Of a DNA stretch of 64,000 nt, positions 13,494 to 53,013 are shown piece after piece. The translations under genes and the position numbers were made by a program. Where the stretch lies: positions 62,001-126,000 of IMG/VR virus record IMGVR_UViG_3300030102_006934. One strand, written 5' to 3'. The notes below the pieces were generated by a model, which saw nothing but the letters and a program-made list of their open reading frames with translations, had not been told where the DNA came from and made no database searches. Every line of letters starts with the position of its first letter. Positions within the stretch are counted from its first letter, which is position 1.

Positions 13494-14948
13494 ATGAGTA
13501 AATTAATTGATACTTTATTAACTAAAGATTCTCTAACAGAGAACGGTATGTCCACAAATTCTACAGCACTAAATTCATGCGTAGATTTATTTTTCAAAAT
13601 TGGTGCATTAAGAGGCGCTGAAAAAAACATAAAAATTAGTTCATTCACTAAAGCTTTTGGTGAAGACCCATTAACGGCCATGAAGATTCTTTTTTGGGCA
13701 AGAGACGTAAGGGGTGGTGCTGGAGAGCGAAAAACTTTTAGAGAGATATTAAGGTATTTAGTTAAAAACAAAACTGAAGTTGTTAAAAACAACATGGCTT
13801 TAATTCCTGAATACGGTAGATGGGACGACATGTTATATCTAATTGGAACTAAATTAGAGAAAGAAGCCCTAGGTGAAATCGCGTGTGCCTTAGAAGGTAA
13901 AAATGGTCTTTGCGCCAAGTGGATGCCTAGAGGCAACACTAAAAACAGGGAAAAGAAAAGATGGGCTTCGGTCATCAGAAAATATTTAGGATTAACTCCT
14001 AAATCTTACAGAAAATTATTATCTGAATTATCTAATACTGTTGAACAGTTAATGTGTTCTAAAAAATTCAAAGACATTAACTATTCTCACGTACCATCAA
14101 AGGCTATGTCTGATTATATGAGAGCTTTTGAAAGGAACGATAGTGAGGGTTTTAATAAATACTTAGATTCACTTAAAAATGGGGATACTAAAATTAACTC
14201 TGGGGCTATATACCCATATGATGTAACTAAGAACTTACAACATGGTTCTTCAGTAGGTGCAGTTGAGCAATGGAAATCATTACCAAACTATATGGAGGGT
14301 TCTAAAGAAAGAGTTTTACCAGTTGTTGATGTTTCTGGTTCTATGACTGTTCCAGCTGGTAATAACCCAAACCTATCTTGCTTAGATGTTTCGGTTTCTC
14401 TAGGTTTATATATTTCAGAAAGAAATGAAGGACCTTTTAAAGACGCCTTTTTTACTTTCTCAAATTCGCCACAGCTACAATATTTGAAGGGGGACCTTTC
14501 AGATAGGTTCACACAATTAAGTATGGCTGAATGGGGTGGGTCAACGAATATTGAAGCTACATTTAAAACTCTTTTAGATGTATCGGTAAATAACAATGTT
14601 AGTGCTGAAGAAATGCCTACAATGATATTAATACTCTCAGATATGGAATTCAATCAAGCCACCAGTATGGGTTGGAGCCAAGCTGAATCAGGCTGGAACC
14701 CAACGGTACAAGAAATGATTGAAAAAATGTATGATAATGCTGGTTACAAAATGCCAAAGATTGTATATTGGAACATTCAATCAAGACGGGACAATGTGCC
14801 AGTTAAATTTGATAAACAAGGTACCGCATTAGTTAGTGGGTTTAGCCCCGCATTACTAACCGCTTTATTATCTGGAAATGAAATCACACCATACAGTATT
14901 ATGAGTGATGTTATTAATTCAGAAAGATATGATAAAATAAAAATATAA
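13494..14948 (+). CDS. TROVE-like/vWA domain protein (DUF2828 family, Ro60-related)
   Basis: TENG, ARDVRGGAGER, YGRWDD, AKWMPR motifs; MIDAS DVSGS; ILSDMEF; YWN. Confidence 0.8.
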   Translation: MSKLIDTLLTKDSLTENGMSTNSTALNSCVDLFFKIGALRGAEKNIKISSFTKAFGEDPLTAMKILFWARDVRGGAGERKTFREILRYLVKNKTEVVKNNMALIPEYGRWDDMLYLIGTKLEKEALGEIACALEGKNGLCAKWMPRGNTKNREKKRWASVIRKYLGLTPKSYRKLLSELSNTVEQLMCSKKFKDINYSHVPSKAMSDYMRAFERNDSEGFNKYLDSLKNGDTKINSGAIYPYDVTKNLQHGSSVGAVEQWKSLPNYMEGSKERVLPVVDVSGSMTVPAGNNPNLSCLDVSVSLGLYISERNEGPFKDAFFTFSNSPQLQYLKGDLSDRFTQLSMAEWGGSTNIEATFKTLLDVSVNNNVSAEEMPTMILILSDMEFNQATSMGWSQAESGWNPTVQEMIEKMYDNAGYKMPKIVYWNIQSRRDNVPVKFDKQGTALVSGFSPALLTALLSGNEITPYSIMSDVINSERYDKIKI

Positions 14949-17099: not shown

Positions 17100-18155
17100 A
17101 TGCCCAAAAAAGATTACTATAAAATACTAGGTGTTAACAGAGATTCTGATGCCAAAACAATTAAAAAGGCATATAGAAAGTTATCTAAAAAATACCATCC
17201 AGATGTAAATCCAGATAACAAAGAAGCTGAGGAAAAATTTAAAGACGTTGCTTCAGCATATGAGGTCCTTTCTGATAAAACTAAAAAGAGTAATTATGAT
17301 ACCTTTGGTGATGAGAATGGGCGACCCAATAACTCATTTAATGATACAAACATGTCTGATATATTTAGTCAGTTTGGTTTTGGTGGGAGAGCAAATCCAT
17401 TTACAAGACAAAGACAAACTAGGGGTAATGATTTGGCTTTAAATATAAAAATAAGTCTTGAGGATGTTCATAACGGACTGACTAAAAAATTCAAATATAG
17501 GAGGAACGCAAAGTGTGAACCATGTGACGGTGAAGGTGGAACAGAAAAATCAACTTGTCCAAATTGTAATGGTACTGGGTATCAAACATTCCAACAAAAA
17601 ACCCCAATGGGTATTATGAGACAAATGGTTGATTGTAGTACGTGCGAATCAACTGGTGAGGTAAATAAAAAAATGTGTAACTCATGTTCTGGAAATGGAG
17701 TTAAAAATAAAGAAGAATATATAGAGGTTAAAATACCAAAAGGTGTTACAGATAATGATATTATATCATATAATGGTATGGGTCATTCTATAAAGGGTGG
17801 TTCTTCGGGTAGACTAATAGTTAAATTATTAATCACAAAAAATGAGCACTTTACTAGAAATGGTGATGATTTAAAATATAATTTAAAATTAAAATACCCA
17901 CAATTGGTTTTAGGTGATAAGGTAGAAATACCAACAATAGACGGAACTAAAATAAGAGTTAAAATACCAAAGTTAAGTAATATTGGTGATAACTTAAGAA
18001 TCGTTGGTAAAGGATTAAATAGCAAAAAGGGTGATAATGTAGTTGGTGACATGTTAATAAATTTAGATATTGAAATGCCTAAAAAACTAGAAGAAGGTGA
18101 AGAAGAACTAATAGATAAATTAAAAATAATTAATGAAAGAGTTGCTAAAGAATAA
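17100..18155 (+). CDS. dnaJ: molecular chaperone DnaJ
   Basis: J domain with HPD, G/F region, four CxxCxGxG-type repeats, C-terminal domain. Confidence 0.95.
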
Positions 18156-18433: not shown

Positions 18434-18853
18434 ATGGCAAAGTACGAAGAACCATTTAAAGACACACAAGAAATTTTTGATGAAGTGATTAGAAATTCAG
18501 GCTTGGACAGGTATATCAACATTAAATTATTGGTAGATAATAAGCAAAAGAAAAAAGTTGCAAAACCATATAAGTCACCAAACTTATTAAAACATGAAAC
18601 AAAAAATGATGTTTACATTATAATAAATGAATTGATTTTTGAACAACTAGAAACCTGGCAAAAATTAATGGTCGCTGAGGAAGCTATAGCTGGAATTAGT
18701 TTTGATACGGAAAAGGATAAACTAGAAATAAAAACTGGTGACATCTCAACTTTTTCAGGGCTATTAAAGAAGTATGGCTATGAAAGGTACGAAGTAGTTG
18801 AAGAGTCTGTCAAGACACTATATAATGTCGAAAGAGAAACAGCAGAGGTGTAA
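18434..18853 (+). CDS. hypothetical protein (possibly degenerate phage metallopeptidase-like)
   Basis: ORF; no intact HExxH. Confidence 0.45.
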   Translation: MAKYEEPFKDTQEIFDEVIRNSGLDRYINIKLLVDNKQKKKVAKPYKSPNLLKHETKNDVYIIINELIFEQLETWQKLMVAEEAIAGISFDTEKDKLEIKTGDISTFSGLLKKYGYERYEVVEESVKTLYNVERETAEV

Positions 18854-19107
18854 TGACTAGAGAAGAAATTGCAGAATATAATGAAGAGGCGCTAATATGT
18901 GATGGCTTTGATGAAGCCATCATTGGTGTCGCTGAGAGAATAAATTTAGGTCCAGTAGCCGCATATAGCGTTGAAAAAATAATAGAAATACTAATGGAAA
19001 GAGACGGTATGACATATGAAGATGCTCACGAGCACTTTTCTTATAATATTATTGGGTCATGGATGGGCGAATACACACCCGTCTTTATTTACACAAATGA
19101 AGAATAA
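18853..19107 (+). CDS. conserved phage hypothetical protein
   Basis: DGFDEAIIG...YS..KII..LM..DGMT.E.A.E.F.YNI.G.WMGE.TP motif common in phages. Confidence 0.7.
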   Translation: MTREEIAEYNEEALICDGFDEAIIGVAERINLGPVAAYSVEKIIEILMERDGMTYEDAHEHFSYNIIGSWMGEYTPVFIYTNEE

Positions 19108-19109
19108 AT

Positions 19110-19331
19110 ATGAAAGAACAATTGTACAAATTATTAAGTAGTAAGGCATTATCAGAAAAAGAAGAAGCCTTAACCACATTGAAATTATTATCAGAATATC
19201 CAGCTGGTATTGGTGACCACTCTACTGGTGACTTTTATAATAATGCTGAAGAGGCTCTACAAAAATTAGTTGATGCTGATGATAAGTTAGAAACACTAGA
19301 TAAATATAAAGATATTTTATTTAAAATTTAA
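19110..19331 (+). CDS. conserved phage hypothetical protein
   Basis: PAGIGDHS motif. Confidence 0.6.
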   Translation: MKEQLYKLLSSKALSEKEEALTTLKLLSEYPAGIGDHSTGDFYNNAEEALQKLVDADDKLETLDKYKDILFKI

Positions 19332-19335
19332 GATT

Positions 19336-20034
19336 ATGTTAGACTTTTATAGTGAATTTAAAAAATATGCTAAATTACATATGGGTGTTGATGAAATGAA
19401 ATTTCGTGACTGGGAGAACCTACAATCAAATATGTATAATAATGTTCAAGTGGGTGGGTCATTAACACCTTACATATTGGAAGAAAGGGAAATGAGAGTA
19501 ACTCAGATGGACATCTTTTCAAGACTAATGATGGATAGAATATTATGGGTGGCTGGCCCAGTAAACGACCAAATGAGCACTGTACTTCAAGCTCAATTAA
19601 TGTTTTTAGATAACGTTGAGGAAAGAGACATTACGATGCATGTCGACTCACCAGGGGGGTCAGTTAAATCTGGATTAAGCATGGTAGATGTTATGAATTA
19701 TGTTAAATCAGATATTGTAACCATAAATACTGGTATGGCGGCCTCCATGGGCTCAATATTGCTTGGTAACGGAACTAAAGGTAAAAGATTTTCACTGCCA
19801 AACTCAAAAGTTATGCTACACCAAGTTTCCGCTGGGGCACAAGGCCATGTTGAAGACATGAAAATTAGTATTGCGGAGGCTGACAAATATAATGATAAAC
19901 TATTTGGCATGTTAGCTAGTTTTTGTGGTAAAACAAAGAAAAGAGTATTAGCTGATTGCAATAGAGATAATTGGCTTGATGCGAAAGAAGCTTTAGACTA
20001 TGGCATCATTGATGGTATAGTTGAAAATAAATAA
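19336..20034 (+). CDS. clpP: ATP-dependent Clp protease proteolytic subunit
   Basis: DIFSRLMMDRI, DSPGGSV, GMAASMG (catalytic Ser), MLHQ, RDNW. Confidence 0.95.
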   Translation: MLDFYSEFKKYAKLHMGVDEMKFRDWENLQSNMYNNVQVGGSLTPYILEEREMRVTQMDIFSRLMMDRILWVAGPVNDQMSTVLQAQLMFLDNVEERDITMHVDSPGGSVKSGLSMVDVMNYVKSDIVTINTGMAASMGSILLGNGTKGKRFSLPNSKVMLHQVSAGAQGHVEDMKISIAEADKYNDKLFGMLASFCGKTKKRVLADCNRDNWLDAKEALDYGIIDGIVENK

Positions 20035-20036
20035 AG

Positions 20037-20507
20037 TAAAATCGGGTTGTTACTAATAACAAATGAATATAAAATTAAATTAATATGGAAACAATAATTT
20101 TAGTAACAGTCTTATCAACACTAGGTGTAGTTGCAATGCTTACGGCAATTGTGGTTATGGCTTTTAAGTTGAGAAATAAGGTTGATGTTAATAGTTTCGA
20201 AGAAGAAGTAAAAACTATTTATAATGAATCAAATATAAGATTCTCTGAATTAGAATCAAGACTCGATGATGAAATTCAACACATACATCGAGAACTTAAT
20301 AATAATGTTGAAGAAGCGCATAGGCGTATAAATAATGAAAGTGAAGAAATTAGGAGACTAATTGATTCAAGGCTTGATAAATTAGACTCTAAATTTGTTG
20401 GCGGTATTAACCAATTACAGAATGAGTTAAACTTTAATCTAGCTAAAAATAAAATGGGTGAGGATATACTCACACCTATAGACTAATAAAACAACAACCC
20501 GATTTTA
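20037..20507. repeat. perfect 15-bp inverted repeat bracketing one gene
   Basis: TAAAATCGGGTTGTT (20037-20051) / AACAACCCGATTTTA (20493-20507). Confidence 0.85.
20085..20486 (+). CDS. TM-anchored coiled-coil protein
   Basis: N-terminal TM; IDSRLDKL motif. Confidence 0.65.
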   Translation: METIILVTVLSTLGVVAMLTAIVVMAFKLRNKVDVNSFEEEVKTIYNESNIRFSELESRLDDEIQHIHRELNNNVEEAHRRINNESEEIRRLIDSRLDKLDSKFVGGINQLQNELNFNLAKNKMGEDILTPID

Positions 20508-20618
20508 AATGAGGACCTCGAAAGATTTCCTCATTTTTTTTTTAACCACTTGACTTTAAGATAAAAGTTTATTATATTTGTGAATATTTAAAAACAAAAG
20601 ATACGTTCTTTAACATAT

Positions 20619-20990
20619 GGGGCAAAATGGTTATTGATTATTTATAGTCGTGATTAGTAAGCATGCAGTGTTAGATTGGAAACACTTTAATTACCTATCA
20701 TTTTTCTTAGATGGAAACGAGTTTGACATCGATGAAAACTTCCTAGATACCGCTTCAGTAGAAGTTGGTACGGGAGAGGTTGCATTCGCCTAAGAGTAAT
20801 GATGATGGTGGTAATCCACCAACCCTCTTTGATAGTAGAGTTTAAAAAATTATCCAGAAGATTAGTTATCAGTAAAACGAACTGTAATAAGGGAACTGTT
20901 AAACTTTGCTGGGATTAGAAACCAGATAAGCATGTAGAAAACTCTTTATGAGTAAGTAAGACTAGAGTTCGAATCTCTATTGCTCCACTA
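20619..20990 (+). ncRNA. ssrA: tmRNA; probable tag (A)GNEFDIDENFLDTASVEVGTGEVAFA
   Basis: Acceptor stem GGGGCAA/TTGCTCC-A with G3.U wobble; T-arm TAGAG-TTCGAAT-CTCTA; internal frame 20713-20793 ending AFA-stop; TATATTTG promoter at 20573; CCA not encoded. Confidence 0.88.
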
Positions 20991-21080
20991 ATACTCCTTT
21001 ATTTTTATATCAAGGGGTTTACTAAAAAAATATATTACTTATATTTATAAAAGAATAAAAAAAATAAAAAAAATTTTATT

Positions 21081-21530
21081 ATGTCAGTTATTACAGAAAA
21101 CAGTACAGTGATGGTCCATTACACTGGTAAATTAAACGATGGATTTGTGTTTGATTCATCAAAAGCCGTTGAAGGTGATGATAGGTTTGTAGATAGAGAA
21201 CCATTAAAAGTTGAGTTGGGTAAAGGGTTAGTTATACCTGGATTTGAAAAGGGTTTAATCGGAATGAAAGCTGGTGAAACTAAAACCGTTGCCATACCAA
21301 CAAAAGAAGCTTACGGTGAAAAAAGAGAAGACATGCTTCAAGAAATACCTAAAGAAAACGCCCCAAAAGATGTTAAAGTGGGTGCTGGATTACAAGCGGA
21401 TGGCCCAAACGGAAAAATGGTTGTTGTTGTATCTGAGGTTAAAGAAAAAACAGTTGTTATTGATGCAAATCACCCACTAGCTGGAAAAGATTTGAATTTT
21501 GAATTAGAGGTAGTTTCTATCGAGAAATAG
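21081..21530 (+). CDS. FKBP-type peptidyl-prolyl isomerase (SlyD/SlpA-like)
   Basis: HYTGKL.DG.VFDSS, IPGFEKGL.GM, EAYG, DANHPLAGKDLNF. Confidence 0.92.
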   Translation: MSVITENSTVMVHYTGKLNDGFVFDSSKAVEGDDRFVDREPLKVELGKGLVIPGFEKGLIGMKAGETKTVAIPTKEAYGEKREDMLQEIPKENAPKDVKVGAGLQADGPNGKMVVVVSEVKEKTVVIDANHPLAGKDLNFELEVVSIEK

Positions 21531-21556
21531 ATATATTAAATAACATTTAAGACATT

Positions 21557-21583
21557 AAAAAGCCCACAGTTGTGGGCTTTTTT
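21557..21583 (+). terminator. intrinsic terminator
   Basis: AAAAGCCCAC-AGTT-GTGGGCTTTT. Confidence 0.75.
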
Positions 21584-21618
21584 ATTATAAATATATATTT
21601 ATTATAAAAATAAACACT

Positions 21619-21846
21619 ATGAAAGAATTTATAAAAGATATATTTACCGAAGACAAAAATGAAGGTAAATATTCATCAAAAAAAACAGTTGGAATAATTG
21701 CTGCTATTTTAGGTTTTATTGGATTTATTGTTGACGGGTTTCACTTTTACGAAATTAGCGAAACTATGTTTGATTCAATATTAATTTTTTCGGGTACTAT
21801 GTTAGGTGCCTCACTTGTTAAAAGTTTTAGTAAAAGCAGTAAATAA
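21619..21846 (+). CDS. two-TM small membrane protein, holin candidate
   Basis: SSKK motif then two TM helices, basic tail, late motif upstream. Confidence 0.45.
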   Translation: MKEFIKDIFTEDKNEGKYSSKKTVGIIAAILGFIGFIVDGFHFYEISETMFDSILIFSGTMLGASLVKSFSKSSK

Positions 21847-39704: not shown

Positions 39705-41360
39705 ATGTCTTATATTAACGTAAATAATATTTTTTCATATACAAACCCTTATGGTGGTGCTCCAGGGCCAAATCCTCCATTCCCAGGTAAAATTAAAATC
39801 CTTTACTCCCCATTACTCCATGGTTTCATGTGTGATGCTATACATGGTGGTTCTCACGCAGAAGGAGAAAGGTCTAAAGCTTATGGTAGTCCTTCTCACG
39901 CGGAAGGTTATAAAACTGAAGCTTTTGGTGCTTATTCTCATTCTGAGGGTTATGAAACACAAGCTCACGCTGAGGGTTCTCACGCTGAGGGTTATAGAAC
40001 CGAGGTTGTGAGTGGTACTTCCGTTACTGGACATTATGCTCATGCTGAAGGTGGTTACACCAATGCTCATGGGCAATATTCACACGCTGAAGGTAGTAGT
40101 ACAAATGCTATTGGTAATACCTCACATGCTGAAGGAAAACATACAACATCTACTGGTATTAACTCACACGCTGAGGGTTTATTTTCTGAATCTATTGGTA
40201 ATGCTTCGCACGCAGAAGGACAAGGTACAATTGCTAGTGGTGATTTTTCCCATTCAGAAGGTTTTTTCACCCAATCTAATGGGGAGGGTTCTCACGCTGA
40301 GGGTTATAGGACAACGGCGAATGGTGATTATTCTCATTCTCAGGGGTATTGGACTACTACAGACGCTAACTACCAAACCGTAGTGGGTAAATATAATTCT
40401 CCGAGTGGTACTCAAGGGGCTTTTATTGTCGGTAATGGTGTCGCTAATAACGTACTAAACAATTTATTGGTTGCTGCTGGTAACGAAGTAGAAGTATTTG
40501 GTAACACAAAAACTGAGACTATACAAGTAACGGATGGAGCGACAGCAGGATATGTATTAACTTCTGACGCTTCAGGTAATGGTACTTGGCAATCAGTCGC
40601 TGGATTAACAGACACATTTGTAACAGGAGCTTCTTTAGCTGGTACTGATTTAGAAATAAATAGAAATAATGGTGAACCACAAATAGTTGTTGATTTATCA
40701 CCACTTAGTGGTGTTGATATCTTTACAACAGGTGCTACATACGATAATGGGACATCAACTGCCACATTTAATAGAAATGATGGTAATTCATATACTTTAG
40801 ATTTGTCCACTATGGATGTTAATGACACATTTGTTACAAGTTCCTCTTTAAGTGGTACAACCTTATTAATAGATAGAAACCAAGGAGAACCACAAATTAG
40901 TGTAGATTTAAGTTCATTGGCAGACGACACTATTGTAAATGGTTTTACTTATTCAAATAATAACTTAACAATTAGTCAAAATGGTCAATCTGATTTAACA
41001 ACTAACATAAGTGTTATGACAGGGGTAACTGTTAATGGTGTCGCTGACTTTACTGATGAGATTTTAATTAATTCTACAACCTTATTTGGACAAACTACAT
41101 GGAACCCAGCGGGTGTAAGTAGAGCAACCCATAGAATAGATGGTATAGTCACACCAACATTAGCAGATGGTACTGATGGGCAGTTATTACACATCTTCGT
41201 AGCAGATGTTTTAAGTGTTGGTAGCTCAACTGTAACAGTTACTACTAGTTTAGGTTTCAATACGATAGCCTTTAACGCACTTGGTGATTCCGTGACTTTA
41301 ATGTTTAATCAACCTTTTGGTTGGACAATCGTTGGTAGTTATAATGTGGTAATTAGTTAA
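39705..41360 (+). CDS. tail fibre/adhesin with YadA-head-like SHAEG repeats
   Basis: About 12 SHAEG/SHSEG 14-aa repeats, FIVGNG, GYVLTSDASGNGTW, DTFVTG repeats. Confidence 0.75.
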   Translation: MSYINVNNIFSYTNPYGGAPGPNPPFPGKIKILYSPLLHGFMCDAIHGGSHAEGERSKAYGSPSHAEGYKTEAFGAYSHSEGYETQAHAEGSHAEGYRTEVVSGTSVTGHYAHAEGGYTNAHGQYSHAEGSSTNAIGNTSHAEGKHTTSTGINSHAEGLFSESIGNASHAEGQGTIASGDFSHSEGFFTQSNGEGSHAEGYRTTANGDYSHSQGYWTTTDANYQTVVGKYNSPSGTQGAFIVGNGVANNVLNNLLVAAGNEVEVFGNTKTETIQVTDGATAGYVLTSDASGNGTWQSVAGLTDTFVTGASLAGTDLEINRNNGEPQIVVDLSPLSGVDIFTTGATYDNGTSTATFNRNDGNSYTLDLSTMDVNDTFVTSSSLSGTTLLIDRNQGEPQISVDLSSLADDTIVNGFTYSNNNLTISQNGQSDLTTNISVMTGVTVNGVADFTDEILINSTTLFGQTTWNPAGVSRATHRIDGIVTPTLADGTDGQLLHIFVADVLSVGSSTVTVTTSLGFNTIAFNALGDSVTLMFNQPFGWTIVGSYNVVIS

Positions 41361-41379
41361 TATAAAAAAATAAAAAAAA

Positions 41380-44300
41380 ATGACAATAGGTAATATTAAT
41401 AATAAAGAAAGTGGGGCTTCGGTTAGGAATAAACTTAACCAGCTCATAAATGAGGTTAATACGTTAGCTTCTCAAATAAGTTCGGGTGATACCAATACTT
41501 TTGTTACTGGTGCGACTTTGGTTAGTACTATTTTAGATATTGAAAGAAACGATGGTGTAGATATTAGTGTAGACCTATCTTCAATTAATAGTAATGTTTT
41601 TGTTGATAGTGGTAATGCGAACCCTATTACACAACAACTAACTTTTACAAACACTAGTGGTGGTACTTTTAATGTTACCAACGCTGCAGCCCTATTTAGT
41701 GGTAACGATGTGAATGTTACGGGTGGAACATATAACCCAACCAATGGTTGTGTTACATTTAGTACAAATAGTGCATCAACTTTCGATGTCTGTGGATTTT
41801 TAACTGGGCTAACTGATACTTTTATTAGTGGGACCACATTAGTGGGGACAAGTTTTACTTTAAATAGAACAGATGGTGTTAATTTAACAACTGATTTTAG
41901 TAGTATTGTTGATGACAAATTAGATATAACCACTTTTGATTCTTATACCGCTAATACCACTGATAATGTGGTGACTGGAGCAACTTTAGTAGGAACGACT
42001 TTAGAATTAGAAAGAAATAATGGATTATCTGATGTAACAGTAGATTTAAGTCCCCTGAGTGGTTCAAGTGTAGACACTTTTGTTACAGGTAGTACTCTAA
42101 TAGGTACATCCTTTACTTTAAAAAGAAATGATGGGGTAGACATAACAACCGACTTGAATCCCATAGTAAATAATAAATTAGATATAACCACCTTTGATTC
42201 TTATACCGCAAACACTACAGATAATGTGGTGACTGGAGCAACTTTAGTTGGACCTATATTAGAATTAGAAAGAAATAATGGATTATCTGATGTAACAGTA
42301 GATTTAAGTTCATTAACTGGGTCGGTAGATACAAATACGTTTGTCACAGGTAGTACTCTAGTGGGTACAACTTTGAATTTGGAAAGGAACGATGGTGTTA
42401 CTGTTAGTGTTAATTTAAACTCACTGACTGGTTCTACTGATACAAATACTTTTGTAACAGGGACAACATTAAATGGTAATGATTTGATAATTGAGAGGAA
42501 TGATGGTGTTGAAATAACCACTAATTTAAACCCTATTTTAAGTGGTAAGTTAGATACCACCTTATTTAATTCTTATACCGCTAATACCACTGATAATGTG
42601 GTGACTGGAGCAACTTTAGTAGGAACGACTTTAGAGTTAGGGAGAAATAATGGATTAAGTGATGTAACCGTAGATTTAAGTTCCATAGATAATAATGTTT
42701 TCGTTAATAGTGGTAAAGCAAATGCTGCGACTCAAAGATTATCATTTACCAACACAACTGGGGGTACTTTTACCGTCACAGATTCAGCAGCACTATTTAG
42801 TGATAACGATGTAAACGTAACTGGCGGAACATATAACCCAACCAATGGTTGTGTTACATTTAACACAAATAGTGGAACTACTTTTGATGTTTGTGGTTTT
42901 GTAACTGGATTGACTGATACATTTATCACAGGTACCACTTTAGTTGGTACAAATTTTACTTTAAATAGAACAGATGGTGTTAATTTAACGACAGACTTTA
43001 ACCCTATCCTTAGTGGTAAATTAGATATAACCACTTTTGATTCTTATACCGCAAACACTACAGATAATTTTGTTACAGGTGCTACCTTAGTGGGTAGTAC
43101 TTATACTATAAAAAGAAATGATGGGGTAAATATATCTACTAATTTAAACCCTATTTTAAGTGGTACGGTGGATACCACATTATTTAATTCTTATACCGCT
43201 AATACACAAACTGAAATTAATAATAAGTTAAACATCACCACTTTTGATTCTTATACCGCAAACACTACAGATAATGTAGTGACTGGAGCGACTTTAGTGG
43301 ACACATCATTAGGGTTAGAAAGAAATAATGGATTATCTGATGTAACAGTAGATTTATCACCATTAAGTGATATAAATACTGGTAATATTTTATGGGTAGA
43401 CTCAATTTTTGGTGACGACTCAACTGCGGTTACTAATAGACAAGACAAACCTTATTTAACCATAGAACAGGCGTTAAGTGCTTCAACAGTTGGGGATACA
43501 TTAGTTGTAAGACCAGGTATCTATGATGAGGAAGGATTAGTTGTCTCAAAAGGAGTTTCTTTAGTTAGTGAAGGTGGTTGGGAAGTAACTACTATTGGTA
43601 AATCTTCCGCAACTGCATCTAGAGATATATTGGAATTAAATGAAAATTCATTTATAGATGGATTTAGTGTAAATGTACCAGAAGGAAACTTTAATGGTAT
43701 AATAGCTTCAAATAGTGGTGGAACATCTACCGCAAATAATATTACATTCTACGGTAATGGAGGAACAGGAAGTACTGGTACTGGTTTATTTAAAACAGGT
43801 GGTGGTAAATTAATCGGTTTCTCAATTAGAGTAGAAGGTGGTGGTATGGGTAACTGCTTGAAGGTTGATTCGGGTACTTTAGCATTAGAGGGTGTACATG
43901 TACCACAATCAAATGGTGAGATTAAAAATGTATTATTGGTAACTACTTCGGGTGGTACTAACGCGGGTATAGCACAAATGGTAGGGTTTAATTCTGGAAA
44001 CAGTAATGTATCTAACGCTATTAGAACCCAAGGTGGTAGTTCGGGTGTTATACCAGTGGTCAAAATATTTACACCTAACATATTTGGTTCGACTAACGCA
44101 TTAAGTGCCTCGGGAGATTATGAAGATATTAATTTATTGGGGGGTTCACTAGAGAATGTAACTTATTCAGTAAAAGTGGATTTAACTGGTACTGGTGTAG
44201 GTGCCTCTTATAGAATAACCTCTAACCACCAACCAAATTATATTTACCCACCAGCAGTAGCCTATACAGCAGACTTTGGTTTAGATTTTACACAAGAATC

Positions 44301-46137
44301 TACTGATGAATTTAAGTCAAGTAAAAATTTGTTCGGTTTATCTCAAATGAGTTTAGGTTTCGCAGAGAAAGGAACGGAATTAAACGCTGGTAGGGGAGCA
44401 CCCTCTACTGTGGGTATGAAAGTATTTACTACAGATAATACCGCGTCTAGTGTTAGTGATGGTGGAAATATAACTGATGTTACAGATGAAGCAAAATCTA
44501 AGGCAGGTAGTACGGTTACTTTCCAAACGGGAGGTACTAATACCACAATATTATTTACCACACAAAGAGTTTCTCCAGATTTTTCCACACCATTAAAATA
44601 TTATGGGTTGGATTTAAATGTCTTACAGAAAAAAGTGGGTGGTGATTATACCTTTGAATATTGGGACGGTTCGGAATGGGTTGAGGATTTGGTTCATATT
44701 CATTCTGCTGATTTAGGTTATAGTTATGGTAATGAATTGTTTTTGAGAAGTCAAAGTGATGAAAATTTAATTTTTGATTTAAGTAAAGATTCTTGGTCAG
44801 TTAAAACTATAAATGGTGTAGATGGTTATTGGATGAGGTGTAGAATGACCAGTACTGGTACGACTCAACCTACAATAGAACAATCTAAAATAATTTATGA
44901 TAGTAGTACCATAAGTAAAGATGGTGTACTTTCTTTTAATGGTAAATCTCTTTATAAGGAGGTAACAAATTTATATAATGGAACATGGGGTTATCCAGTC
45001 TCTACCTTATCTGATTATAACGTTACTGTGGGGTCAGGTACAGGCTCAGAAACTTGGACACATGAATTTTTAGATTCTCAGTTTGCCAATAATGAAGCAG
45101 CAACTTTTGTACTAAAAATACCACAAGGTGCTAGTACATCACAAAAAGTTAATGTTAACGCTACTTACACATTAAACGGTACAGCAGCAGACACAACGGC
45201 AGCTCAATTAGAGTTTTCCTTTTTACCAGTGGAAGTCGCAAACATTAGAGTCGCTGATGGAGAAGGTAGTAAAGAACCAATCCCTAGAATTGTTTCCGCA
45301 ACAACAGAATTTAACGTAGATGCGGCTCAAACAACAAAACCTTTAACTGAAATAGGGGAAAATAAAATATTTCAATCTCCTTTAGGTAGTTTCGACATCT
45401 CAAATTATTATGAAGGTGATATAGTACTTATGAGGTTAGAAAAAGAGAGTGGTACTAACGTTAATTTTAATTTAATATCTTTAGACTTCGAAGTTTCTAA
45501 ATGGAGTTTAGGTAAACAGTCAGAAGGGTTAAAAATAGCCACTGAAACAATATTTAGTGAGGATTGGTCTGACTTTGGTGTTAGTAATGGTTGGCAATAT
45601 GAACAAGATTCTGGGGAGGACAACTTATGGGTAGTTAGTAGTGGTACCTCTAGAACGGGAGACAACTCAGCATATATAACTAATGATAGTGGAGGTACTA
45701 ATGTATATGAATATAATGTTAGTAATACTAATAACGGAACACATTTATATGTCGATTTCTCAATTCCAGCAAAAGCAAGTAGTTTAACTGTTAATTTCTA
45801 TTGGACAGCGAAAGGTGAAAACGGTGGAGGATCGACCTCTTGGGATTACGGTAGGGTTGGTTTATTACCAACTAGTACAACACCAAGTGCTGGTAGTGAA
45901 TTTTCTAGTACTTTTAGAATAGGAGCAGATTCTAACTCAAATAAATTTAATTTAGGGTATAACGGAGGTGCTTTCGAAGATGATTGGCAATTAGAAACAA
46001 TACCAATTTCAAATAGTTTATGGACTGCTGGTGAAGATAGAAGACTATGTTTAACTTGGAAAAACGATTTCGGTGCGGGTACACAACCACCATTCGCGGT
46101 AACAGATATAACAATTGATATACAGTATTTAGAATAG
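41380..46137 (+). CDS. long tail fibre/spike: tandem DTFVTGATL..RNDG repeats + beta-helix (pectin-lyase-like) domain
   Basis: ~640 aa repeat stalk; WVDSIFGDDS...PYLTIEQAL...GDTLVVRPGIY beta-helix cap. Confidence 0.75.
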   Translation: MTIGNINNKESGASVRNKLNQLINEVNTLASQISSGDTNTFVTGATLVSTILDIERNDGVDISVDLSSINSNVFVDSGNANPITQQLTFTNTSGGTFNVTNAAALFSGNDVNVTGGTYNPTNGCVTFSTNSASTFDVCGFLTGLTDTFISGTTLVGTSFTLNRTDGVNLTTDFSSIVDDKLDITTFDSYTANTTDNVVTGATLVGTTLELERNNGLSDVTVDLSPLSGSSVDTFVTGSTLIGTSFTLKRNDGVDITTDLNPIVNNKLDITTFDSYTANTTDNVVTGATLVGPILELERNNGLSDVTVDLSSLTGSVDTNTFVTGSTLVGTTLNLERNDGVTVSVNLNSLTGSTDTNTFVTGTTLNGNDLIIERNDGVEITTNLNPILSGKLDTTLFNSYTANTTDNVVTGATLVGTTLELGRNNGLSDVTVDLSSIDNNVFVNSGKANAATQRLSFTNTTGGTFTVTDSAALFSDNDVNVTGGTYNPTNGCVTFNTNSGTTFDVCGFVTGLTDTFITGTTLVGTNFTLNRTDGVNLTTDFNPILSGKLDITTFDSYTANTTDNFVTGATLVGSTYTIKRNDGVNISTNLNPILSGTVDTTLFNSYTANTQTEINNKLNITTFDSYTANTTDNVVTGATLVDTSLGLERNNGLSDVTVDLSPLSDINTGNILWVDSIFGDDSTAVTNRQDKPYLTIEQALSASTVGDTLVVRPGIYDEEGLVVSKGVSLVSEGGWEVTTIGKSSATASRDILELNENSFIDGFSVNVPEGNFNGIIASNSGGTSTANNITFYGNGGTGSTGTGLFKTGGGKLIGFSIRVEGGGMGNCLKVDSGTLALEGVHVPQSNGEIKNVLLVTTSGGTNAGIAQMVGFNSGNSNVSNAIRTQGGSSGVIPVVKIFTPNIFGSTNALSASGDYEDINLLGGSLENVTYSVKVDLTGTGVGASYRITSNHQPNYIYPPAVAYTADFGLDFTQESTDEFKSSKNLFGLSQMSLGFAEKGTELNAGRGAPSTVGMKVFTTDNTASSVSDGGNITDVTDEAKSKAGSTVTFQTGGTNTTILFTTQRVSPDFSTPLKYYGLDLNVLQKKVGGDYTFEYWDGSEWVEDLVHIHSADLGYSYGNELFLRSQSDENLIFDLSKDSWSVKTINGVDGYWMRCRMTSTGTTQPTIEQSKIIYDSSTISKDGVLSFNGKSLYKEVTNLYNGTWGYPVSTLSDYNVTVGSGTGSETWTHEFLDSQFANNEAATFVLKIPQGASTSQKVNVNATYTLNGTAADTTAAQLEFSFLPVEVANIRVADGEGSKEPIPRIVSATTEFNVDAAQTTKPLTEIGENKIFQSPLGSFDISNYYEGDIVLMRLEKESGTNVNFNLISLDFEVSKWSLGKQSEGLKIATETIFSEDWSDFGVSNGWQYEQDSGEDNLWVVSSGTSRTGDNSAYITNDSGGTNVYEYNVSNTNNGTHLYVDFSIPAKASSLTVNFYWTAKGENGGGSTSWDYGRVGLLPTSTTPSAGSEFSSTFRIGADSNSNKFNLGYNGGAFEDDWQLETIPISNSLWTAGEDRRLCLTWKNDFGAGTQPPFAVTDITIDIQYLE

Positions 46138-46180
46138 GTAGTGAAGTTTATTTAGGACGTTAGACAACTTTTGAATTAGA

Positions 46181-46255
46181 TTAATCTCTTTTTCTTAATA
46201 TTATCACTAGTAGTACCACCAAGAAGCAGAAAACGAATCTTTCAAATTCTTCCAT
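46181..46255 (-). CDS. 24-aa hydrophobic peptide MEEFERFVFCFLVVLLVIILRKRD
   Basis: Read manually; start codon enclosed in a 10-bp stem. Confidence 0.4.
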   Translation of the reverse strand: MEEFERFVFCFLVVLLVIILRKRD

Positions 46256-46339
46256 GTCTTTTAGATTCGTTTATAAATATAGTAACATGTATCAAAGTAT
46301 AGTATTTATTTTTAACCTTTAATCGATATTTATTAATAT

Positions 46340-47809
46340 ATGAGTATCAAAAAATACATAAAAGAAGAGATGGATAGTTTTGACTGGATTAAGGACGTAA
46401 AAACTAATGATACTATCGCTAAAGAAATTTATGATACTCTAAAATGGCATAAGGTTCCCAATGTAACAACAGATTTTGTGAAAGTACCGTGGGTTGACAT
46501 TGTTTTTGCGGTAAGAAAAAGAAACTTAAGTGACTCCAAAATACCTTTAATCACCCCAAGTACATTTTACAAAGGTTTTACAAAATACGTAAAAGAATAT
46601 TACAATATTTTTGATCCTCAAACTGGTGTGTTAGAAATTTACAATAAAGTTAGGGCATTAATGGGGGATAAAATTCATGGAACTATTACTGAGTCTAATG
46701 ACTTTGGTTGGACAAATAGTTCTAAACTCATATACCCTCAAGACTTAGTCGGTTATTATTTTACTTACACTGAAAAAGAATATACAATAACTAAGGTGGA
46801 TGAAATGTATTTAAGTGATGATCCAGAAGATGAAAAACTCACCGTTTATTATAAGTATCGAGCTTATGAGGGGTTACGTAAAAACAAAATGGATGTGGAT
46901 ACTTTGATTTATAGAATCAAAGGTGGTGACTACGGTCTATATGACTTGGAGGGTAATCCTGTTAATCCAGATGATTTGGTATATAGTGATGGTAAGTTGG
47001 AAGATGTTGATTCTGTTAATGAAAATTCTGATTTTGATTGGGTGAGTGATGTTACCCCTTATATTGATAAGGTTACTGACCTACAAATTGGTGAGTATTA
47101 TGAAATAAAGGACATAGACACAAAACTTTTCACCATGTTGGTTGATTGTGGGTGGCACTATGAGTCTGAATTAATTAGAGATTTATATGATAAAGGTGAA
47201 ATACTTACCGTTAAAATTAGTGAAACGGTACCAAACGCTATATTAAATTACTATGTTTATTGTGATGGGCGTACAACATCATGGAAACCTAATAATACCG
47301 TTTCAAAGAGGGGTCCTGTAGCGGGAATAGAACTTTATAGTGAAATGGATACCTCACATCACCCAAGACATGATTGGATACCTTTCCACTCTTTTTATAT
47401 TACAGATGGTATGATAACATTTTACAGAGATAATAAGGATTTGAATGAGTCCGCAGAATTTGGTTGGATAGAAGATGTAAAACCAAATGTGTTGAAGGCT
47501 TTGGCTGATGCGAGTACGGGTGATGAGAGAATTAATTTTATTTATAGTGATGAAAATAAATATTTCACCTCCATTGAGGATGAAAAAGGTTTTAACTACT
47601 TTACTAGAGTATCTCTTATTTCATACTTAAGAAAAGTTAGGCAGGATTGGGATACCATGCCTGAGGTAATACTTAATAGTATGACCGTTGATGAGATGTT
47701 GGGTTTTATAGAAAAATTTTTAAAAGATAACTTCCCTGACCAACAACCAGTTGCTATATATGAGGACTATTTATATTTATATGAATTTATTAAACGTGGA
47801 TTAAAATAA
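46340..47809 (+). CDS. leader + four-module FDW polyprotein
   Basis: IKEEMDSFDWIKD; ITESNDFGW; VNENSDFDWVSD; LNESAEFGWIED. Confidence 0.8.
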   Translation: MSIKKYIKEEMDSFDWIKDVKTNDTIAKEIYDTLKWHKVPNVTTDFVKVPWVDIVFAVRKRNLSDSKIPLITPSTFYKGFTKYVKEYYNIFDPQTGVLEIYNKVRALMGDKIHGTITESNDFGWTNSSKLIYPQDLVGYYFTYTEKEYTITKVDEMYLSDDPEDEKLTVYYKYRAYEGLRKNKMDVDTLIYRIKGGDYGLYDLEGNPVNPDDLVYSDGKLEDVDSVNENSDFDWVSDVTPYIDKVTDLQIGEYYEIKDIDTKLFTMLVDCGWHYESELIRDLYDKGEILTVKISETVPNAILNYYVYCDGRTTSWKPNNTVSKRGPVAGIELYSEMDTSHHPRHDWIPFHSFYITDGMITFYRDNKDLNESAEFGWIEDVKPNVLKALADASTGDERINFIYSDENKYFTSIEDEKGFNYFTRVSLISYLRKVRQDWDTMPEVILNSMTVDEMLGFIEKFLKDNFPDQQPVAIYEDYLYLYEFIKRGLK

Positions 47810-47810
47810 A

Positions 47811-51575: not shown

Positions 51576-51577
51576 TT

Positions 51578-52792
51578 ATGGAGATAAGAAAAATAATAAG
51601 GGAAGAATTAAATGATTTCGATTGGGTTAGGGATGTTGAACCTGAATTAACGCCAGAAACATTAGAATTAATCTATAATAAGCCATTTCACTTTCACCGT
51701 ACAGAAGATAGTGGACCAAATATGAAGAATGGTAAACCAACAGTCTACTGGGTGGATAGGAGGTTGAGTGAGTTAAAAAATACTAATAAGTCTTCTAAGA
51801 ACCCTATTGCGGATGATAGAGAGTTTTTTTTATGTTATAAAGAACCCCAAGGACCACACACACTTCACCAATGTAGTGAAATGTATGCTAAAACAATAAT
51901 CAGTTATATCAAAAGAAAACAACTTGTTCAACAGAAAGAATTATCAGATATTAAAGAATCTGAAATTTATTTAAATAAAATACTTAATAGGTTATCCTTA
52001 ATTAAAGAAGATGGTAAAAAACCAGACATGGAGTGGGATTTTACTAAGACTAATTTAGATAAATCTAAAAAATGGGTTAAAACAAAAGAAGATGTTAAAA
52101 AATATCTTTCACTCTTATTTGATAAATTAAAAAATTTACCTAGAAAAACTAAAATTAAAATAATTAAGTATGTTTTAACTTCTTTTATTGGTTTATTAAC
52201 AATAAGCCAATTACAAGATATTGTGGATGAGACCTCACCAGAGAAGATAGAAATTAAGAAACCAATAAAACAAGAACTTCCAACAGACAAGGATTCAACC
52301 AAAGTTATGAACACTCAAATAAATAAAATTAGAAAACCTAGTGAAGAGTTAACTACTTTTCTAAAAAAAGAAGAGGGGTACGTTGATAAAGGTTATAAGA
52401 TTGGTGATGGTAAAATAACGATTGGTTGGGGTCATGCTGAGGATATTGATGGTTCTAAATATACATTGGGTCAACAGATTGACACAACAGAAGCCGAAAC
52501 ATTATTAAGACAAGATATTAAAGAATCTTCAGATGCTTTAAACAGAATTTTAGATGATTGGGAAAGTAAGGGTATCAAGGTTGATATTACACAAGATATG
52601 TATAATGTGATGACATCTATGGTTTTTAATATGGGTATCGGTAACTTTAGAAATTCTGATTTTATCCAATTAGTTAAGGGTAATGAGTTGAGTAGAGCTA
52701 AGGAAAAAATAAAAACAACAAGTTCACACTTATTTGGTAAATTTCCAGGTCTTAAAAAAAGAAGAAAATTAGAATCAGATTTATTTAATTAA
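51578..52792 (+). CDS. leader + FDW module + C-terminal phage lysozyme (GH24-like) domain
   Basis: MEIRKIIREELNDFDW; KKEEG...YKIGDGKITIGWGH, SMVFNMG.GNF, PGL..RR..E..LF. Confidence 0.8.
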   Translation: MEIRKIIREELNDFDWVRDVEPELTPETLELIYNKPFHFHRTEDSGPNMKNGKPTVYWVDRRLSELKNTNKSSKNPIADDREFFLCYKEPQGPHTLHQCSEMYAKTIISYIKRKQLVQQKELSDIKESEIYLNKILNRLSLIKEDGKKPDMEWDFTKTNLDKSKKWVKTKEDVKKYLSLLFDKLKNLPRKTKIKIIKYVLTSFIGLLTISQLQDIVDETSPEKIEIKKPIKQELPTDKDSTKVMNTQINKIRKPSEELTTFLKKEEGYVDKGYKIGDGKITIGWGHAEDIDGSKYTLGQQIDTTEAETLLRQDIKESSDALNRILDDWESKGIKVDITQDMYNVMTSMVFNMGIGNFRNSDFIQLVKGNELSRAKEKIKTTSSHLFGKFPGLKKRRKLESDLFN

Positions 52793-53010: not shown

Positions 53011-53013
53011 GAT

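What the first reader, a model, noticed from the sequence alone, without database searches (positions are those of the whole stretch)
19336..20990. Phage tmRNA with an unusually long acidic tag next to a phage ClpP
Seen: the probable tag frame encodes 26 residues (GNEFDIDENFLDTASVEVGTGEVAFA), and clpP lies ~580 bp upstream of the tmRNA. Established: typical ssrA tags are ~10 aa and end in Ala-rich ClpX degrons. Inference: the phage may run its own tagging and degradation channel with altered adaptor specificity. The resume codon is my estimate.
Basis: partly seen in the sequence, partly recalled or inferred. Interest (0 to 1): 0.6.

Follow-up and report, generated by a model that had tools for sequence, protein, structure and literature searches.

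The report
Phage tmRNA with long conserved tag
A 380-kb marine phage carries a real ribosome-rescue RNA (tmRNA), present in RNA libraries, whose unusually long 26-residue acidic tag is conserved across about a hundred related phage contigs and always lies just behind the phage's own ClpP protease gene; this suggests, but does not prove, a phage-run tag-and-degrade route.

Summary
ARAGORN and Rfam both call a tmRNA at 20619-20990 with a 26-codon tag, and clpP ends 584 nt upstream.

The long tag is not a mis-set resume codon:
- 32 distinct relatives keep an open 25-26 codon frame from the same aligned codon.
- Indels in the tag are multiples of three.
- Third codon positions vary most.
- The frame-setting A at -4 is invariant.

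Conservation is two-part: an N-terminal block with an invariant ENFL, a variable spacer, and a C-terminal GE-x-A-x-A.

A scan using tag DNA alone found 70 viral contigs. All 62 with enough upstream DNA have clpP upstream on the same strand. One relative has clpP-smpB-ssrA back to back.

The phage also encodes a ClpC-type unfoldase with the VGF ClpP-docking loop. It has no SmpB, ClpX, Lon, ClpS, SspB or MecA.

The likely host phylum is Bacteroidota. All 54 tmRNAs sampled there have 8-10 residue tags ending LAA or MAA.

Marine metatranscriptome contigs lie on the tmRNA.

The same genome holds a second tmRNA with a 21-residue tag.

A phage-specific degron fed to phage ClpCP is plausible but untested. 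I rate this a new variant of a known kind.

The parts
17100..18155 (+). DnaJ (J domain, zinc-finger centre, C-terminal domain). It is the first gene of the conserved proteostasis block.
   Evidence: Pfam DnaJ, DnaJ_CXXCXGXG and DnaJ_C. NCBIfam DnaJ_bact E 4.5e-103. Upstream of clpP in 35 related loci. No Hsp70 in the genome.
18434..18853 (+). 139-aa protein with a minigluzincin-like (PF18894) fold but no HExxH motif. Conserved upstream of clpP. Role unknown.
   Evidence: PF18894 E 1.3e-6. AlphaFold pLDDT 85.7. Foldseek best matches are selecase and jannalysin, TM 0.5-0.63, E 1.7e-3. 0 of 43 homologues have H[ED]xxH. Syntenic in 43 loci.
18853..19107 (+). 84-aa conserved protein directly upstream of clpP. 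Function unknown.
   Evidence: phrog_13182, unknown function, E 5.3e-25. Present in 37 related loci at up to 89% identity. No fold match.
19336..20034 (+). ClpP, a cellular-type serine protease subunit with the Bacteroidota-type N-terminal extension.
   Evidence: PF00574 196.6 bits. Best NCBIfam match is PRK14514 ClpP at 229.6 bits, against 71.5 bits for the head-maturation model, which is below that model's cut-off of 120. S137, H162 and D211 are invariant in 12 phage homologues. The nearest cellular relatives found are all Bacteroidota, at 41-47% identity.
20085..20486 (+). 133-aa membrane-anchored coiled-coil protein between clpP and the tmRNA. It is not SmpB and is present only in the closer relatives.
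   Evidence: No significant family. Found in 12 loci. In L031/L032 (record G004) this slot holds smpB instead.
20550..20580 (+). The tmRNA's own promoter-like site: TTGACT, 17 nt, TATATT, overlapping a Bacteroidota -7 box TATATTTG at 20573-20580.
   Evidence: Promoter scan. TAnnTTTG lies within 90 nt upstream of 29 of 32 homologous tmRNAs, against 10% of random windows. The -7 box consensus is from PMC7641319.
20619..20990 (+). tmRNA (ssrA), one-piece. Acceptor stem with G3:U; discriminator A at 20987; CCA not encoded (the genome reads CTA).
   Evidence: ARAGORN. Rfam 59.7 bits. G:U pair kept in 25 of 25, with compensatory changes in the acceptor stem, T arm, helix 2 and PK1. Metatranscriptome contigs lie at 20619-20817, 20678-20988, 20666-20934 and 20561-21016.
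20713..20793 (+). Tag reading frame: resume codon GGA at 20713, 26 codons, TAA stop at 20791-20793. Net charge is -7.
   Evidence: Open 25-26 codon frame in 32 of 32 distinct homologues. A at -4 in 32 of 32. Codon-position entropy 0.75, 0.60 and 1.05; synonymous to non-synonymous differing codons 1863:5072 in frame, against 888:6493 and 552:6966 out of frame.
21081..21530 (+). FKBP-type (SlyD-like) peptidyl-prolyl isomerase, the downstream member of the block in the closer relatives.
   Evidence: PF00254 E 3.1e-20. NCBIfam PRK15095. Syntenic in 12 loci.

Best explanation
This is a functional phage tmRNA, which I call type A. It belongs to a conserved gene block, dnaJ ... clpP, then ssrA, found in a clade of large marine and aquatic phages that most likely infect Bacteroidota.

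Shown:
- The RNA has all the structural hallmarks of tmRNA.
- Contigs from RNA libraries lie on it.
- It encodes a 25-26 residue acidic tag that is under selection as a peptide.
- It is essentially always linked to clpP.

Inferred mechanism:
- Host AlaRS charges the RNA, and host SmpB and EF-Tu deliver it to stalled ribosomes. Such ribosomes should be abundant once phage nucleases cut host mRNA.
- The nascent chain then receives a two-part tag: an N-terminal block around the invariant ENFL, a variable spacer of about nine residues, and a C-terminal GE(V/L)A(V/L/F)A.
- The apolar Ala-x-Ala end acts as the degron for a ClpP-based protease. That protease is built from phage ClpP with the phage ClpC-type unfoldase, and possibly also host ClpX.
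- The ENFL block is a second recognition site, for the unfoldase N-domain or for an adaptor not yet recognised.
- The outcome is freed ribosomes and amino acids recycled from truncated proteins, by a route that does not depend on, or compete with, the host's short LAA-type tags.

The confidence figure is for the whole statement. The shown part alone I would put near 0.9. The step 'degraded by phage ClpCP' I would put near 0.4.
For: Identity and structure of the RNA.

Resume codon:
- The Rfam register gives the usual 12-nt spacing after PK1.
- A at -4 is invariant in 32 of 32. Its E. coli counterpart, A86, acts as a ruler that sets the frame four nucleotides downstream (PMC2481249).
- The frame is open in 32 of 32, and indels are in frame.
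- The coding signature reaches codons 1-11.

Selection on the peptide: near-zero entropy at ENFL and at G21, E22, A24 and A26, with a variable middle. The pattern scan gave 38 distinct tags, all 25-26 residues.

Linkage to clpP:
- 40 of the 46 closest clpP loci carry the tmRNA downstream.
- 62 of 62 testable contigs found by tag DNA alone have clpP upstream.
- The order is clpP-smpB-ssrA in L031/L032 (record G004).

Protease partner:
- An 821-aa ClpC-type protein aligns end to end with B. subtilis ClpC (799 bits), with its VGF on the ClpC VGF loop.
- It is present in every related genome at least 86% complete that I searched.
- Its Clp_N domain is present in 6 of 6 type-A genomes and in 0 of 8 others.

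The tag is unlike the host's: 54 of 54 tags sampled in the phylum are 8-10 residues ending (L/M)AA.

Presence in RNA libraries: RNA-library contigs lie on the tmRNA, while 18800-19800 of the same stretch has none in any of the four runs.
Against: - No experiment or computation here links the tag to any protease.
- The complex prediction for ClpP with the ClpC D2 fragment gave no verdict.
- clpC lies about 52 kb away from clpP-ssrA, not in the block.
- The genome has no SmpB and no known adaptor, so the route would be a host-phage hybrid at best.
- The correlation between the Clp_N domain and the tag type rests on only two clades.
- An Ala-x-Ala apolar end could equally be read by host ClpXP, Lon, FtsH or Tsp.
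- The host is inferred, not known.
- The reads tool warns that contigs prove neither transcript ends nor levels.
Confidence: 0.5

Rival explanations
1. The tmRNA is real, but its tag delivers proteins to host proteases (ClpXP, Lon, FtsH or Tsp). clpP and ssrA sit together only because both belong to a general phage proteostasis and translation-support block.
For: - The phage has no ClpX, Lon or known adaptor and no SmpB, so it already depends on host parts.
- The phage DnaJ has no phage Hsp70 partner either, showing that this block works through host partners.
- The tag end is apolar and Ala-rich, like ordinary degrons.
- Long AFA-ended tags in Mollicutes are read by Lon, not by a Clp protease (PMC9382460).
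Against: - Linkage to clpP in 62 of 62 testable contigs, often with only about 125 nt between the genes, is tighter than for any other block member.
- A tag tuned to host proteases would be expected to resemble host tags, and none of the 54 sampled does.
- ClpP and a ClpC with a docking loop are both phage-encoded.
Confidence: 0.25
2. The tag is not a degradation signal. It marks or neutralises truncated proteins in another way: as a very acidic solubility tail, as a decoy that occupies host ClpX or adaptors, or as a sensor of host translation state.
For: - The net charge of -3 to -8 with almost no basic residues is unusual for a degron.
- The ENFL block is conserved more strictly than the extreme C-terminus.
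- The same genome carries a second tmRNA with a different 21-residue tag, which hints at more than one fate.
- The literature notes that some phages use tmRNA to sense host state (PMC7162821).
Against: - The last six residues keep the Ala-x-Ala apolar end that is the common feature of ssrA degrons.
- The obligate clpP neighbour is most simply explained by proteolysis.
Confidence: 0.1
3. Only ribosome rescue is under selection. The tag peptide is a neutral passenger, and its apparent conservation reflects RNA structure in the mRNA-like region.
For: - In E. coli the tag template can be altered with little effect on rescue (PMC2481249).
- Part of the 3' tag region forms a hairpin in some relatives.
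Against: - Third-position variation with fixed first and second positions, a two- to three-fold excess of synonymous differences over the other frames, and strictly in-frame indels all indicate selection on the peptide.
- ENFL is invariant although its codons vary.
Confidence: 0.04
4. The ClpP is the prohead (head-maturation) protease of the phage and has nothing to do with the tmRNA.
For: PHROGs places it nearest to 'head maturation protease' families: phrog_94, E 8.5e-38.
Against: - It matches the full length of cellular ClpP, including the Bacteroidota N-terminal extension, at 229.6 bits. It scores 71.5 bits on the head-maturation model, whose cut-off is 120.
- Its neighbours are DnaJ, FKBP and the tmRNA, not portal or capsid genes.
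- A ClpC with a ClpP-docking loop co-occurs in the complete genomes.
Confidence: 0.04

Closest known systems
Bacterial tmRNA-SmpB trans-translation with the ClpXP-directed ssrA tag (E. coli AANDENYALAA; Bacteroidota GENNYALAA type)
   Same: - One-piece tmRNA with a G3:U acceptor stem, a T arm and PK1.
- A resume codon four nucleotides after a conserved A, and a tag frame closed by a stop.
- An apolar, Ala-rich tag end.
- A two-part logic, with an N-terminal block plus a C-terminal degron, recalls the SspB and ClpX sites of the E. coli tag (PMC9382460).
   Different: - The tag is 25-26 residues against the 8-10 seen in 54 of 54 genomes sampled from the host phylum.
- It ends A-(F/L/V)-A rather than (L/M)AA.
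- It is strongly acidic.
- A variable spacer of about nine residues separates the two conserved blocks.
- It is encoded by a virus, next to clpP, and this genome has no smpB.
Mollicute ssrA tags (for example the Mesoplasma florum mf-ssrA), read by Lon
   Same: Both are longer-than-usual tags ending in AFA. The mollicute case is a documented example of tag length and sequence changing together with the protease that reads the tag (PMC9382460).
   Different: - No Lon is encoded here, and the linked protease gene is clpP.
- There is no sequence relationship beyond the last three residues.
- In most relatives the penultimate residue is V or L rather than F.
Previously reported phage tmRNAs (mycobacteriophage Bxz1 group, Bacillus phage G, pelagiphage and OM43 phage two-piece tmRNAs, huge phages)
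   Same: - Phage-borne ssrA is known: about 2.3% of phage genomes (PMC9004378), a list in PMC4131195, and huge phages with tmRNA and SmpB (PMC7162821).
- Phage G also carries clpP and clpX, and a tmRNA with a 13-residue tag (PMC12484599).
   Different: - None of the papers I read describes a conserved clpP-ssrA or clpP-smpB-ssrA gene cluster, a conserved 25-26 residue acidic tag, or two tmRNAs with different long tags in one phage.
- In phage G the tmRNA is placed between genes described as of unknown function; the passages read report no link to clpP or clpX.
ClpCP protease (B. subtilis ClpC/MecA-ClpP)
   Same: The phage unfoldase has Clp_N, D1, a short UVR-like middle domain, D2 and the VGF loop, aligned end to end with ClpC. 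The phage ClpP has the Ser-His-Asp triad.
   Different: - No MecA, ClpS or other known adaptor is encoded.
- Whether ClpC reads this tag is unknown.
- The sister clade's homologue lacks the N-domain.

Membership tests
tmRNA (Rfam RF00023) | Covariance-model score at or above the curated gathering score | tested here: met
   59.7 bits against 47, over the full model length 1-374. The bacterial tmRNAs sampled from the same phylum score 105-198 bits, so this one is divergent.
tmRNA (Rfam RF00023) | tRNA-like domain: acceptor stem with the G3:U pair needed for alanine charging, and a T arm | tested here: met
   The G:U pair is kept in 25 of 25. Acceptor positions 5-7 show compensatory changes in 9-14 sequences, and T-arm pairs in up to 12. 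Ends are listed.
tmRNA (Rfam RF00023) | An internal open frame starting at a resume codon set by a conserved A four nucleotides upstream, downstream of pseudoknot 1, and closed by a stop | tested here: met
   A at -4 in 32 of 32. The rule comes from PMC2481249. The PK1 stem has compensatory changes in 9 sequences. The frame is open and ends at a stop in 32 of 32.
tmRNA (Rfam RF00023) | Made as a stable RNA | tested here: inconclusive
   Contigs from four marine metatranscriptome runs (two studies) lie on 20561-21016. Some break at 20619 and 20988. No contig lies on 18800-19800. The tool states that contigs cannot prove ends, strand or level.
tmRNA (Rfam RF00023) | SmpB partner available | tested here: not met
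   No PF01668 match in this CheckV-complete genome. Relatives G001 and G004 encode SmpB. Here the partner would have to be the host's, which cannot be tested with these tools.
Canonical ClpX-type ssrA tag | About 8-14 residues ending in (L/M/V)AA | tested here: not met
   The tag has 26 residues and ends AFA. Relatives end A(V/L/F/Y)A. The host-phylum sample is 8-10 residues ending (L/M)AA in 54 of 54.
ClpP (peptidase S14, PF00574) | Full-length family match and an intact Ser-His-Asp triad | tested here: met
   196.6 bits over profile positions 5-181 of 182. S137, H162 and D211 are invariant. The NCBIfam ClpP models match but fall below their equivalog cut-offs.
ClpP (peptidase S14, PF00574) | Works with an AAA+ partner that docks through an (I/L/V)GF loop | not testable with these tools
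   A candidate partner with a VGF loop exists. The complex prediction returned no verdict.
ClpC-type Hsp100 (class I) | Clp_N domain, two AAA modules, a short middle domain and a ClpP-docking tripeptide | tested here: met
   Pfam finds Clp_N, AAA, AAA_lid_9, AAA_2 and ClpB_D2-small. It aligns in a single stretch with B. subtilis ClpC (799 bits), while ClpB aligns in two stretches. Its VGF lies opposite the ClpC VGF.
Phage head-maturation protease (ClpP-related) | A match above the family cut-off and a position among the head genes | tested here: not met
   NCBIfam Clp_rel_HeadMat scores 71.5 bits against a cut-off of 120. The neighbours are chaperone genes and the tmRNA.

The most novel reading that the evidence does not exclude
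These phages run an orthogonal degron system. The ENFL block of the long tag is read by the N-domain of the phage ClpC, or by a phage adaptor that has not been recognised; candidates are the conserved catalytically dead minigluzincin-like protein and the 84-aa protein upstream of clpP. Products of stalled ribosomes are thereby sent to phage ClpCP and kept away from host ClpXP. This genome, with two tmRNAs carrying different long tags, would sort rescued chains into two different fates or two infection stages.
Probability: 0.2. Interest if true: 0.8.

Novelty: new variant of a known kind. Interest (0 to 1): 0.6.

Why it matters
Phage tmRNAs are usually listed as auxiliary translation genes and left at that. 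In this case the tag peptide is clearly under selection, differs from the host's tag, has a two-part layout and is tied to a phage protease gene. That turns the question 'why do phages carry tmRNA?' into a concrete, testable one: do large phages re-route the products of stalled ribosomes into their own ClpP machine?

If so, this would be a natural example of a virus installing a private degradation signal. It would bear on how large phages take over host proteostasis and recycle amino acids in nutrient-poor seawater. It would also supply new orthogonal degron-protease pairs of the kind already exploited from Mesoplasma.

The finding also shows that ARAGORN's tag calls on such RNAs are unreliable. 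It gave truncated tags for several relatives and missed this genome's second tmRNA. Tag surveys of viral tmRNAs therefore need alignment-based checks.

Tried and rejected
- Complex prediction of two ClpP copies with ClpC residues 540-740: score 0.01, no verdict. This is not evidence either way.
- Fold search of the 84-aa protein upstream of clpP: nothing below E = 1.
- Fold search of the 139-aa PF18894-like protein: only weak minigluzincin matches and no adaptor-like fold. It has no HExxH motif in 43 of 43 homologues, so it is unlikely to be an active peptidase.
- Family searches of the whole genome for SmpB, ClpS, SspB, MecA, Lon_C and Hsp70 were all negative. The AAA_2 search found only the ClpC-type gene, so there is no ClpX.
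- ARAGORN missed the second tmRNA. On several relatives it called shorter tags of 9-21 residues. I rejected those calls because the upstream frame is open, coding-like and preceded by the invariant A at -4 only for the long frame.
- blastn of either tmRNA against the curated phage collection gave nothing for the tmRNA itself.
- The nearest curated phage by ClpP, LR745206 (635 kb), has no tmRNA at E <= 1e-10.
- I considered a prophage attachment-site remnant of ssrA and rejected it. The gene is full length, has its own promoter-like site, is conserved in non-integrated large phage genomes, and RNA-library contigs lie on it.
- I considered an alternative genetic code and found no sign of one. 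All genes discussed are open under table 11.
- None of the operators' special cases arose.
- The large protein searches were not used, because the family scans settled the proteins.
Full report
**What is there**

Rfam's tmRNA model matches 20619-20990 over its whole length at 59.7 bits (gathering score 47). It places the resume codon on the same GGA, 12 nt after the first pseudoknot.

Read from the sequence, the tag runs 20713-20790 and the TAA stop is 20791-20793. The acceptor stem carries the G3:U pair. The discriminator A is at 20987. The next three bases are CTA, so CCA has to be added after transcription.

The ORF at 19336-20034 is a full-length ClpP (PF00574, E 4.5e-58) and ends 584 nt before the tmRNA. 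The window is bases 62001-126000 of a 380,343-bp virus record with 31% G+C that CheckV rates complete.

**Is the long tag real?**

I collected relatives of the ClpP from viral contigs; 178 were found and 80 kept. I searched them with the tmRNA sequence, and 40 loci carry a homologous tmRNA downstream of clpP, 32 of them distinct.

- From the aligned resume codon, every one of the 32 has an open frame of 25 or 26 codons ending at the aligned stop.
- The two length differences inside the tag are 3-nt indels.
- Column entropy is 0.75, 0.60 and 1.05 for codon positions 1, 2 and 3.
- Among differing codon pairs, the synonymous to non-synonymous counts are 1863:5072 in the tag frame, against 888:6493 and 552:6966 in the other two frames.
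- This pattern covers the first eleven codons. Codon 4, for example, has entropy 0, 0 and 1.32.
- The base four nucleotides before the proposed resume codon is A in 32 of 32. In E. coli the equivalent A86 is the main determinant of frame choice and acts as a ruler four nucleotides upstream of the resume codon (PMC2481249).

ARAGORN's shorter calls on some relatives are therefore heuristic errors.

RNAalifold on 25 sequences recovers the acceptor stem, T arm, helix 2, the long-range GCAUG helix and the PK1 stem. It finds compensatory changes in 30 of 45 pairs.

**Shape of the tag**

The consensus is (G/D)N(D/E)F(I/D)(V/I)(S/D)ENFL(D/N)(E/T)A, then about six variable residues, then GE(V/L)A(V/L/F)A.

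ENFL, G21, E22, A24 and A26 have almost no variation, while residues 12-20 vary freely. Net charge is -3 to -8, with very few basic residues. So there are two conserved blocks separated by a spacer.

**Linkage to clpP**

In the loci found through ClpP, the order DnaJ, PF18894-like protein, 84-aa protein, ClpP, tmRNA recurs in about 40 loci. The closer relatives also share the FKBP gene downstream.

As an independent test I scanned the viral collection with a DNA pattern taken from the tag alone. It matched 70 contigs.

- All 70 give 25-26 residue tags, 38 of them distinct.
- 62 have clpP upstream on the same strand, with the end of clpP 188-2087 nt before tag codon 8.
- In the other eight, no more than about 715 nt lie between the contig edge and the tag, so none of them is a counter-example.

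In L031/L032 (record G004) an smpB gene (PF01668, E 2.4e-53) sits exactly between clpP and the tmRNA. Record G001 also encodes SmpB, elsewhere in its genome. This genome has no SmpB.

**The rest of the proteolytic kit**

The genome has one Clp/Hsp100 ATPase, at G000:C1:134359-136824 on the minus strand, outside the window.

- It has Clp_N, two AAA modules and the D2-small domain.
- It aligns in one stretch with B. subtilis ClpC (799 bits), whereas ClpB aligns in two pieces.
- It has VGF opposite the ClpC VGF ClpP-docking loop.
- Homologues occur in every related genome at least 86% complete that I searched.
- The six type-A genomes keep the N-domain. The eight genomes of the sister group, whose ClpP is about 60% identical, lack it. 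That is only two clades, so this is weak evidence.

ClpP has an invariant Ser-His-Asp triad. It scores far better on cellular ClpP models than on the head-maturation model.

ClpX, Lon, ClpS, SspB, MecA and Hsp70 were not found. The phage therefore supplies the tmRNA, ClpP, ClpC, DnaJ and an FKBP. It must borrow SmpB, AlaRS, EF-Tu and DnaK from the host.

**Host and host tags**

- The closest cellular ClpPs found are all Bacteroidota, at 41-47% identity over residues 7-232, which includes the N-terminal extension.
- The best NCBIfam model is PRK14514.
- The closest curated phages are a 635-kb uncultured phage and the Prevotella Lak megaphages.
- The tmRNA is preceded by TTGACT, 17 nt, TATATT, overlapping TATATTTG.
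- The Bacteroidota -7 box TAnnTTTG (PMC7641319) occurs within 90 nt upstream of 29 of 32 homologues, against 10% of random windows.

In 54 genomes sampled from that phylum as GTDB defines it, every tag is 8-10 residues ending LAA or MAA. The phage tag is thus clearly different from the tags of its probable hosts. The host remains inferred.

**Presence in RNA libraries**

The stretch occurs in marine metagenomes and in eight marine metatranscriptome runs. I laid four RNA runs, held as contigs, on 18800-21800.

- Contigs lie on the tmRNA at 20619-20817, 20678-20988, 20666-20934 and 20561-21016.
- Separate contigs lie on the neighbouring ORFs.
- No contig lies on 18800-19800 in any run.
- Two contig ends coincide with the predicted mature ends.

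The tool warns that contigs prove neither ends nor levels, and that DNA can be present in RNA libraries. The empty upstream kilobase argues against plain DNA carry-over. I treat expression as likely but not proven.

**A second tmRNA and other long tags**

Rfam finds a second tmRNA at G000:C1:327939-328335 at 106.7 bits; ARAGORN missed it. Read in the Rfam register, it has G3:U, an A at -4 and a 21-residue tag.

The seven other type-A records searched, three of them rated complete, have only the clpP-linked tmRNA.

The sister group carries tmRNAs elsewhere in the genome, with tags of 21 or 24 residues. In three of those genomes the tmRNA lies 3-5 kb downstream of the clpC-like gene. Two records have a host-like 9-residue tag.

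Long tags are therefore a recurring feature of this phage group, and this genome combines two kinds.

**Interpretation**

It is established that this is a genuine tmRNA with a conserved long acidic tag and a near-obligate clpP neighbour; contigs from RNA libraries lie on it. It is inferred that the tag is a degron for a ClpP-based protease and that phage ClpC is the unfoldase.

The two-block layout resembles the adaptor site plus protease site of the E. coli tag. It also recalls the precedent of Mollicutes, where a longer AFA-ended tag goes with a switch of protease (PMC9382460). No adaptor was identified. The complex prediction gave no verdict, and the two conserved small neighbours have no adaptor-like fold.

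The main rival is that host proteases read the tag and the gene block is simply a proteostasis island. A tag with no selected function is contradicted by the coding-type conservation.

**Novelty**

Phage tmRNAs, and SmpB in huge phages, are known (PMC7162821, PMC9004378, PMC4131195, PMC12484599). Among the papers I searched and read, I found no description of a conserved clpP-ssrA or clpP-smpB-ssrA cluster, of a conserved 25-26 residue acidic phage tag, or of two differently tagged tmRNAs in one phage. That is a limited literature check, not proof of absence. I rate it a new variant of a known kind, with interest 0.6.

Noticed in passing
G000:C1:327939-328335 (outside the window; L001:1501-1897): A second tmRNA in the same phage genome: Rfam 106.7 bits, missed by ARAGORN, with a 21-residue tag of the type seen in relatives G132, G134 and G135. 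It is preceded by the same TTATTATATTTGTG box as the first tmRNA. The other type-A genomes searched have only one tmRNA.
   Followed up: partly
window 20605-20613, and the equivalent place in L008-L052: The motif GTTCTTTAA lies a few bases before the mature 5' end of the tmRNA in most of the 32 homologues. The 25-residue-tag subgroup (for example L025, L046 and L050) also has a leader hairpin, ATATGTGGG...CCCACATAT, with compensatory changes. These may be processing or regulatory elements of the precursor.
   Followed up: no
window 18434-18853: A conserved 139-aa protein matches 'putative phage metallopeptidase' PF18894 and models as a minigluzincin-like fold. It lacks the HExxH motif in all 43 homologues, so it is probably not catalytic. 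Its role is unknown, and it always lies two genes upstream of clpP.
   Followed up: partly
G147:C1:234278-239560 (relative, 362 kb): The clpC-type gene is interrupted at the D2 P-loop by about 2.8 kb. The open frame runs on into the second piece, which looks like an intein or another in-frame mobile insertion.
   Followed up: no
G132, G134 and G135 (relatives, 270-317 kb): In the sister clade the tmRNA (21-residue tags) lies 3-5 kb downstream of the N-domain-less clpC-like gene rather than next to clpP. This is a second, looser association of ssrA with a Clp gene.
   Followed up: partly
L049:7492-7563; L037, L039, L047 and L048 between two tRNA-Met genes: One relative encodes a tRNA with a CUA anticodon, a possible amber suppressor. 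Several relatives have tRNA-like genes with irregular anticodon loops, which ARAGORN labels 'tRNA-???'.
   Followed up: no
L099-L107 and L114 (genome contigs): Contigs of this phage clade (ClpP 60-72% identical) are filed inside a Prochlorococcus single-cell assembly and inside metagenome-assembled genomes labelled Methanobacterium, Gammaproteobacteria, Magasanikbacteria, Saprospirales and Flavobacteriaceae. Most are probably binning carry-over. The Bacteroidota ones fit the inferred host.
   Followed up: no
window 39705-57348: A run of very large ORFs (551, 1585, 489, 1254, 404 and 901 aa) has no Pfam match apart from a C-terminal phage lysozyme domain in 51578-52792. This is probably a tail or baseplate block.
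   Followed up: no
window 13494-14948: A 484-aa protein with DUF2828 and DUF7788 domains, of unknown role in a phage.
   Followed up: no
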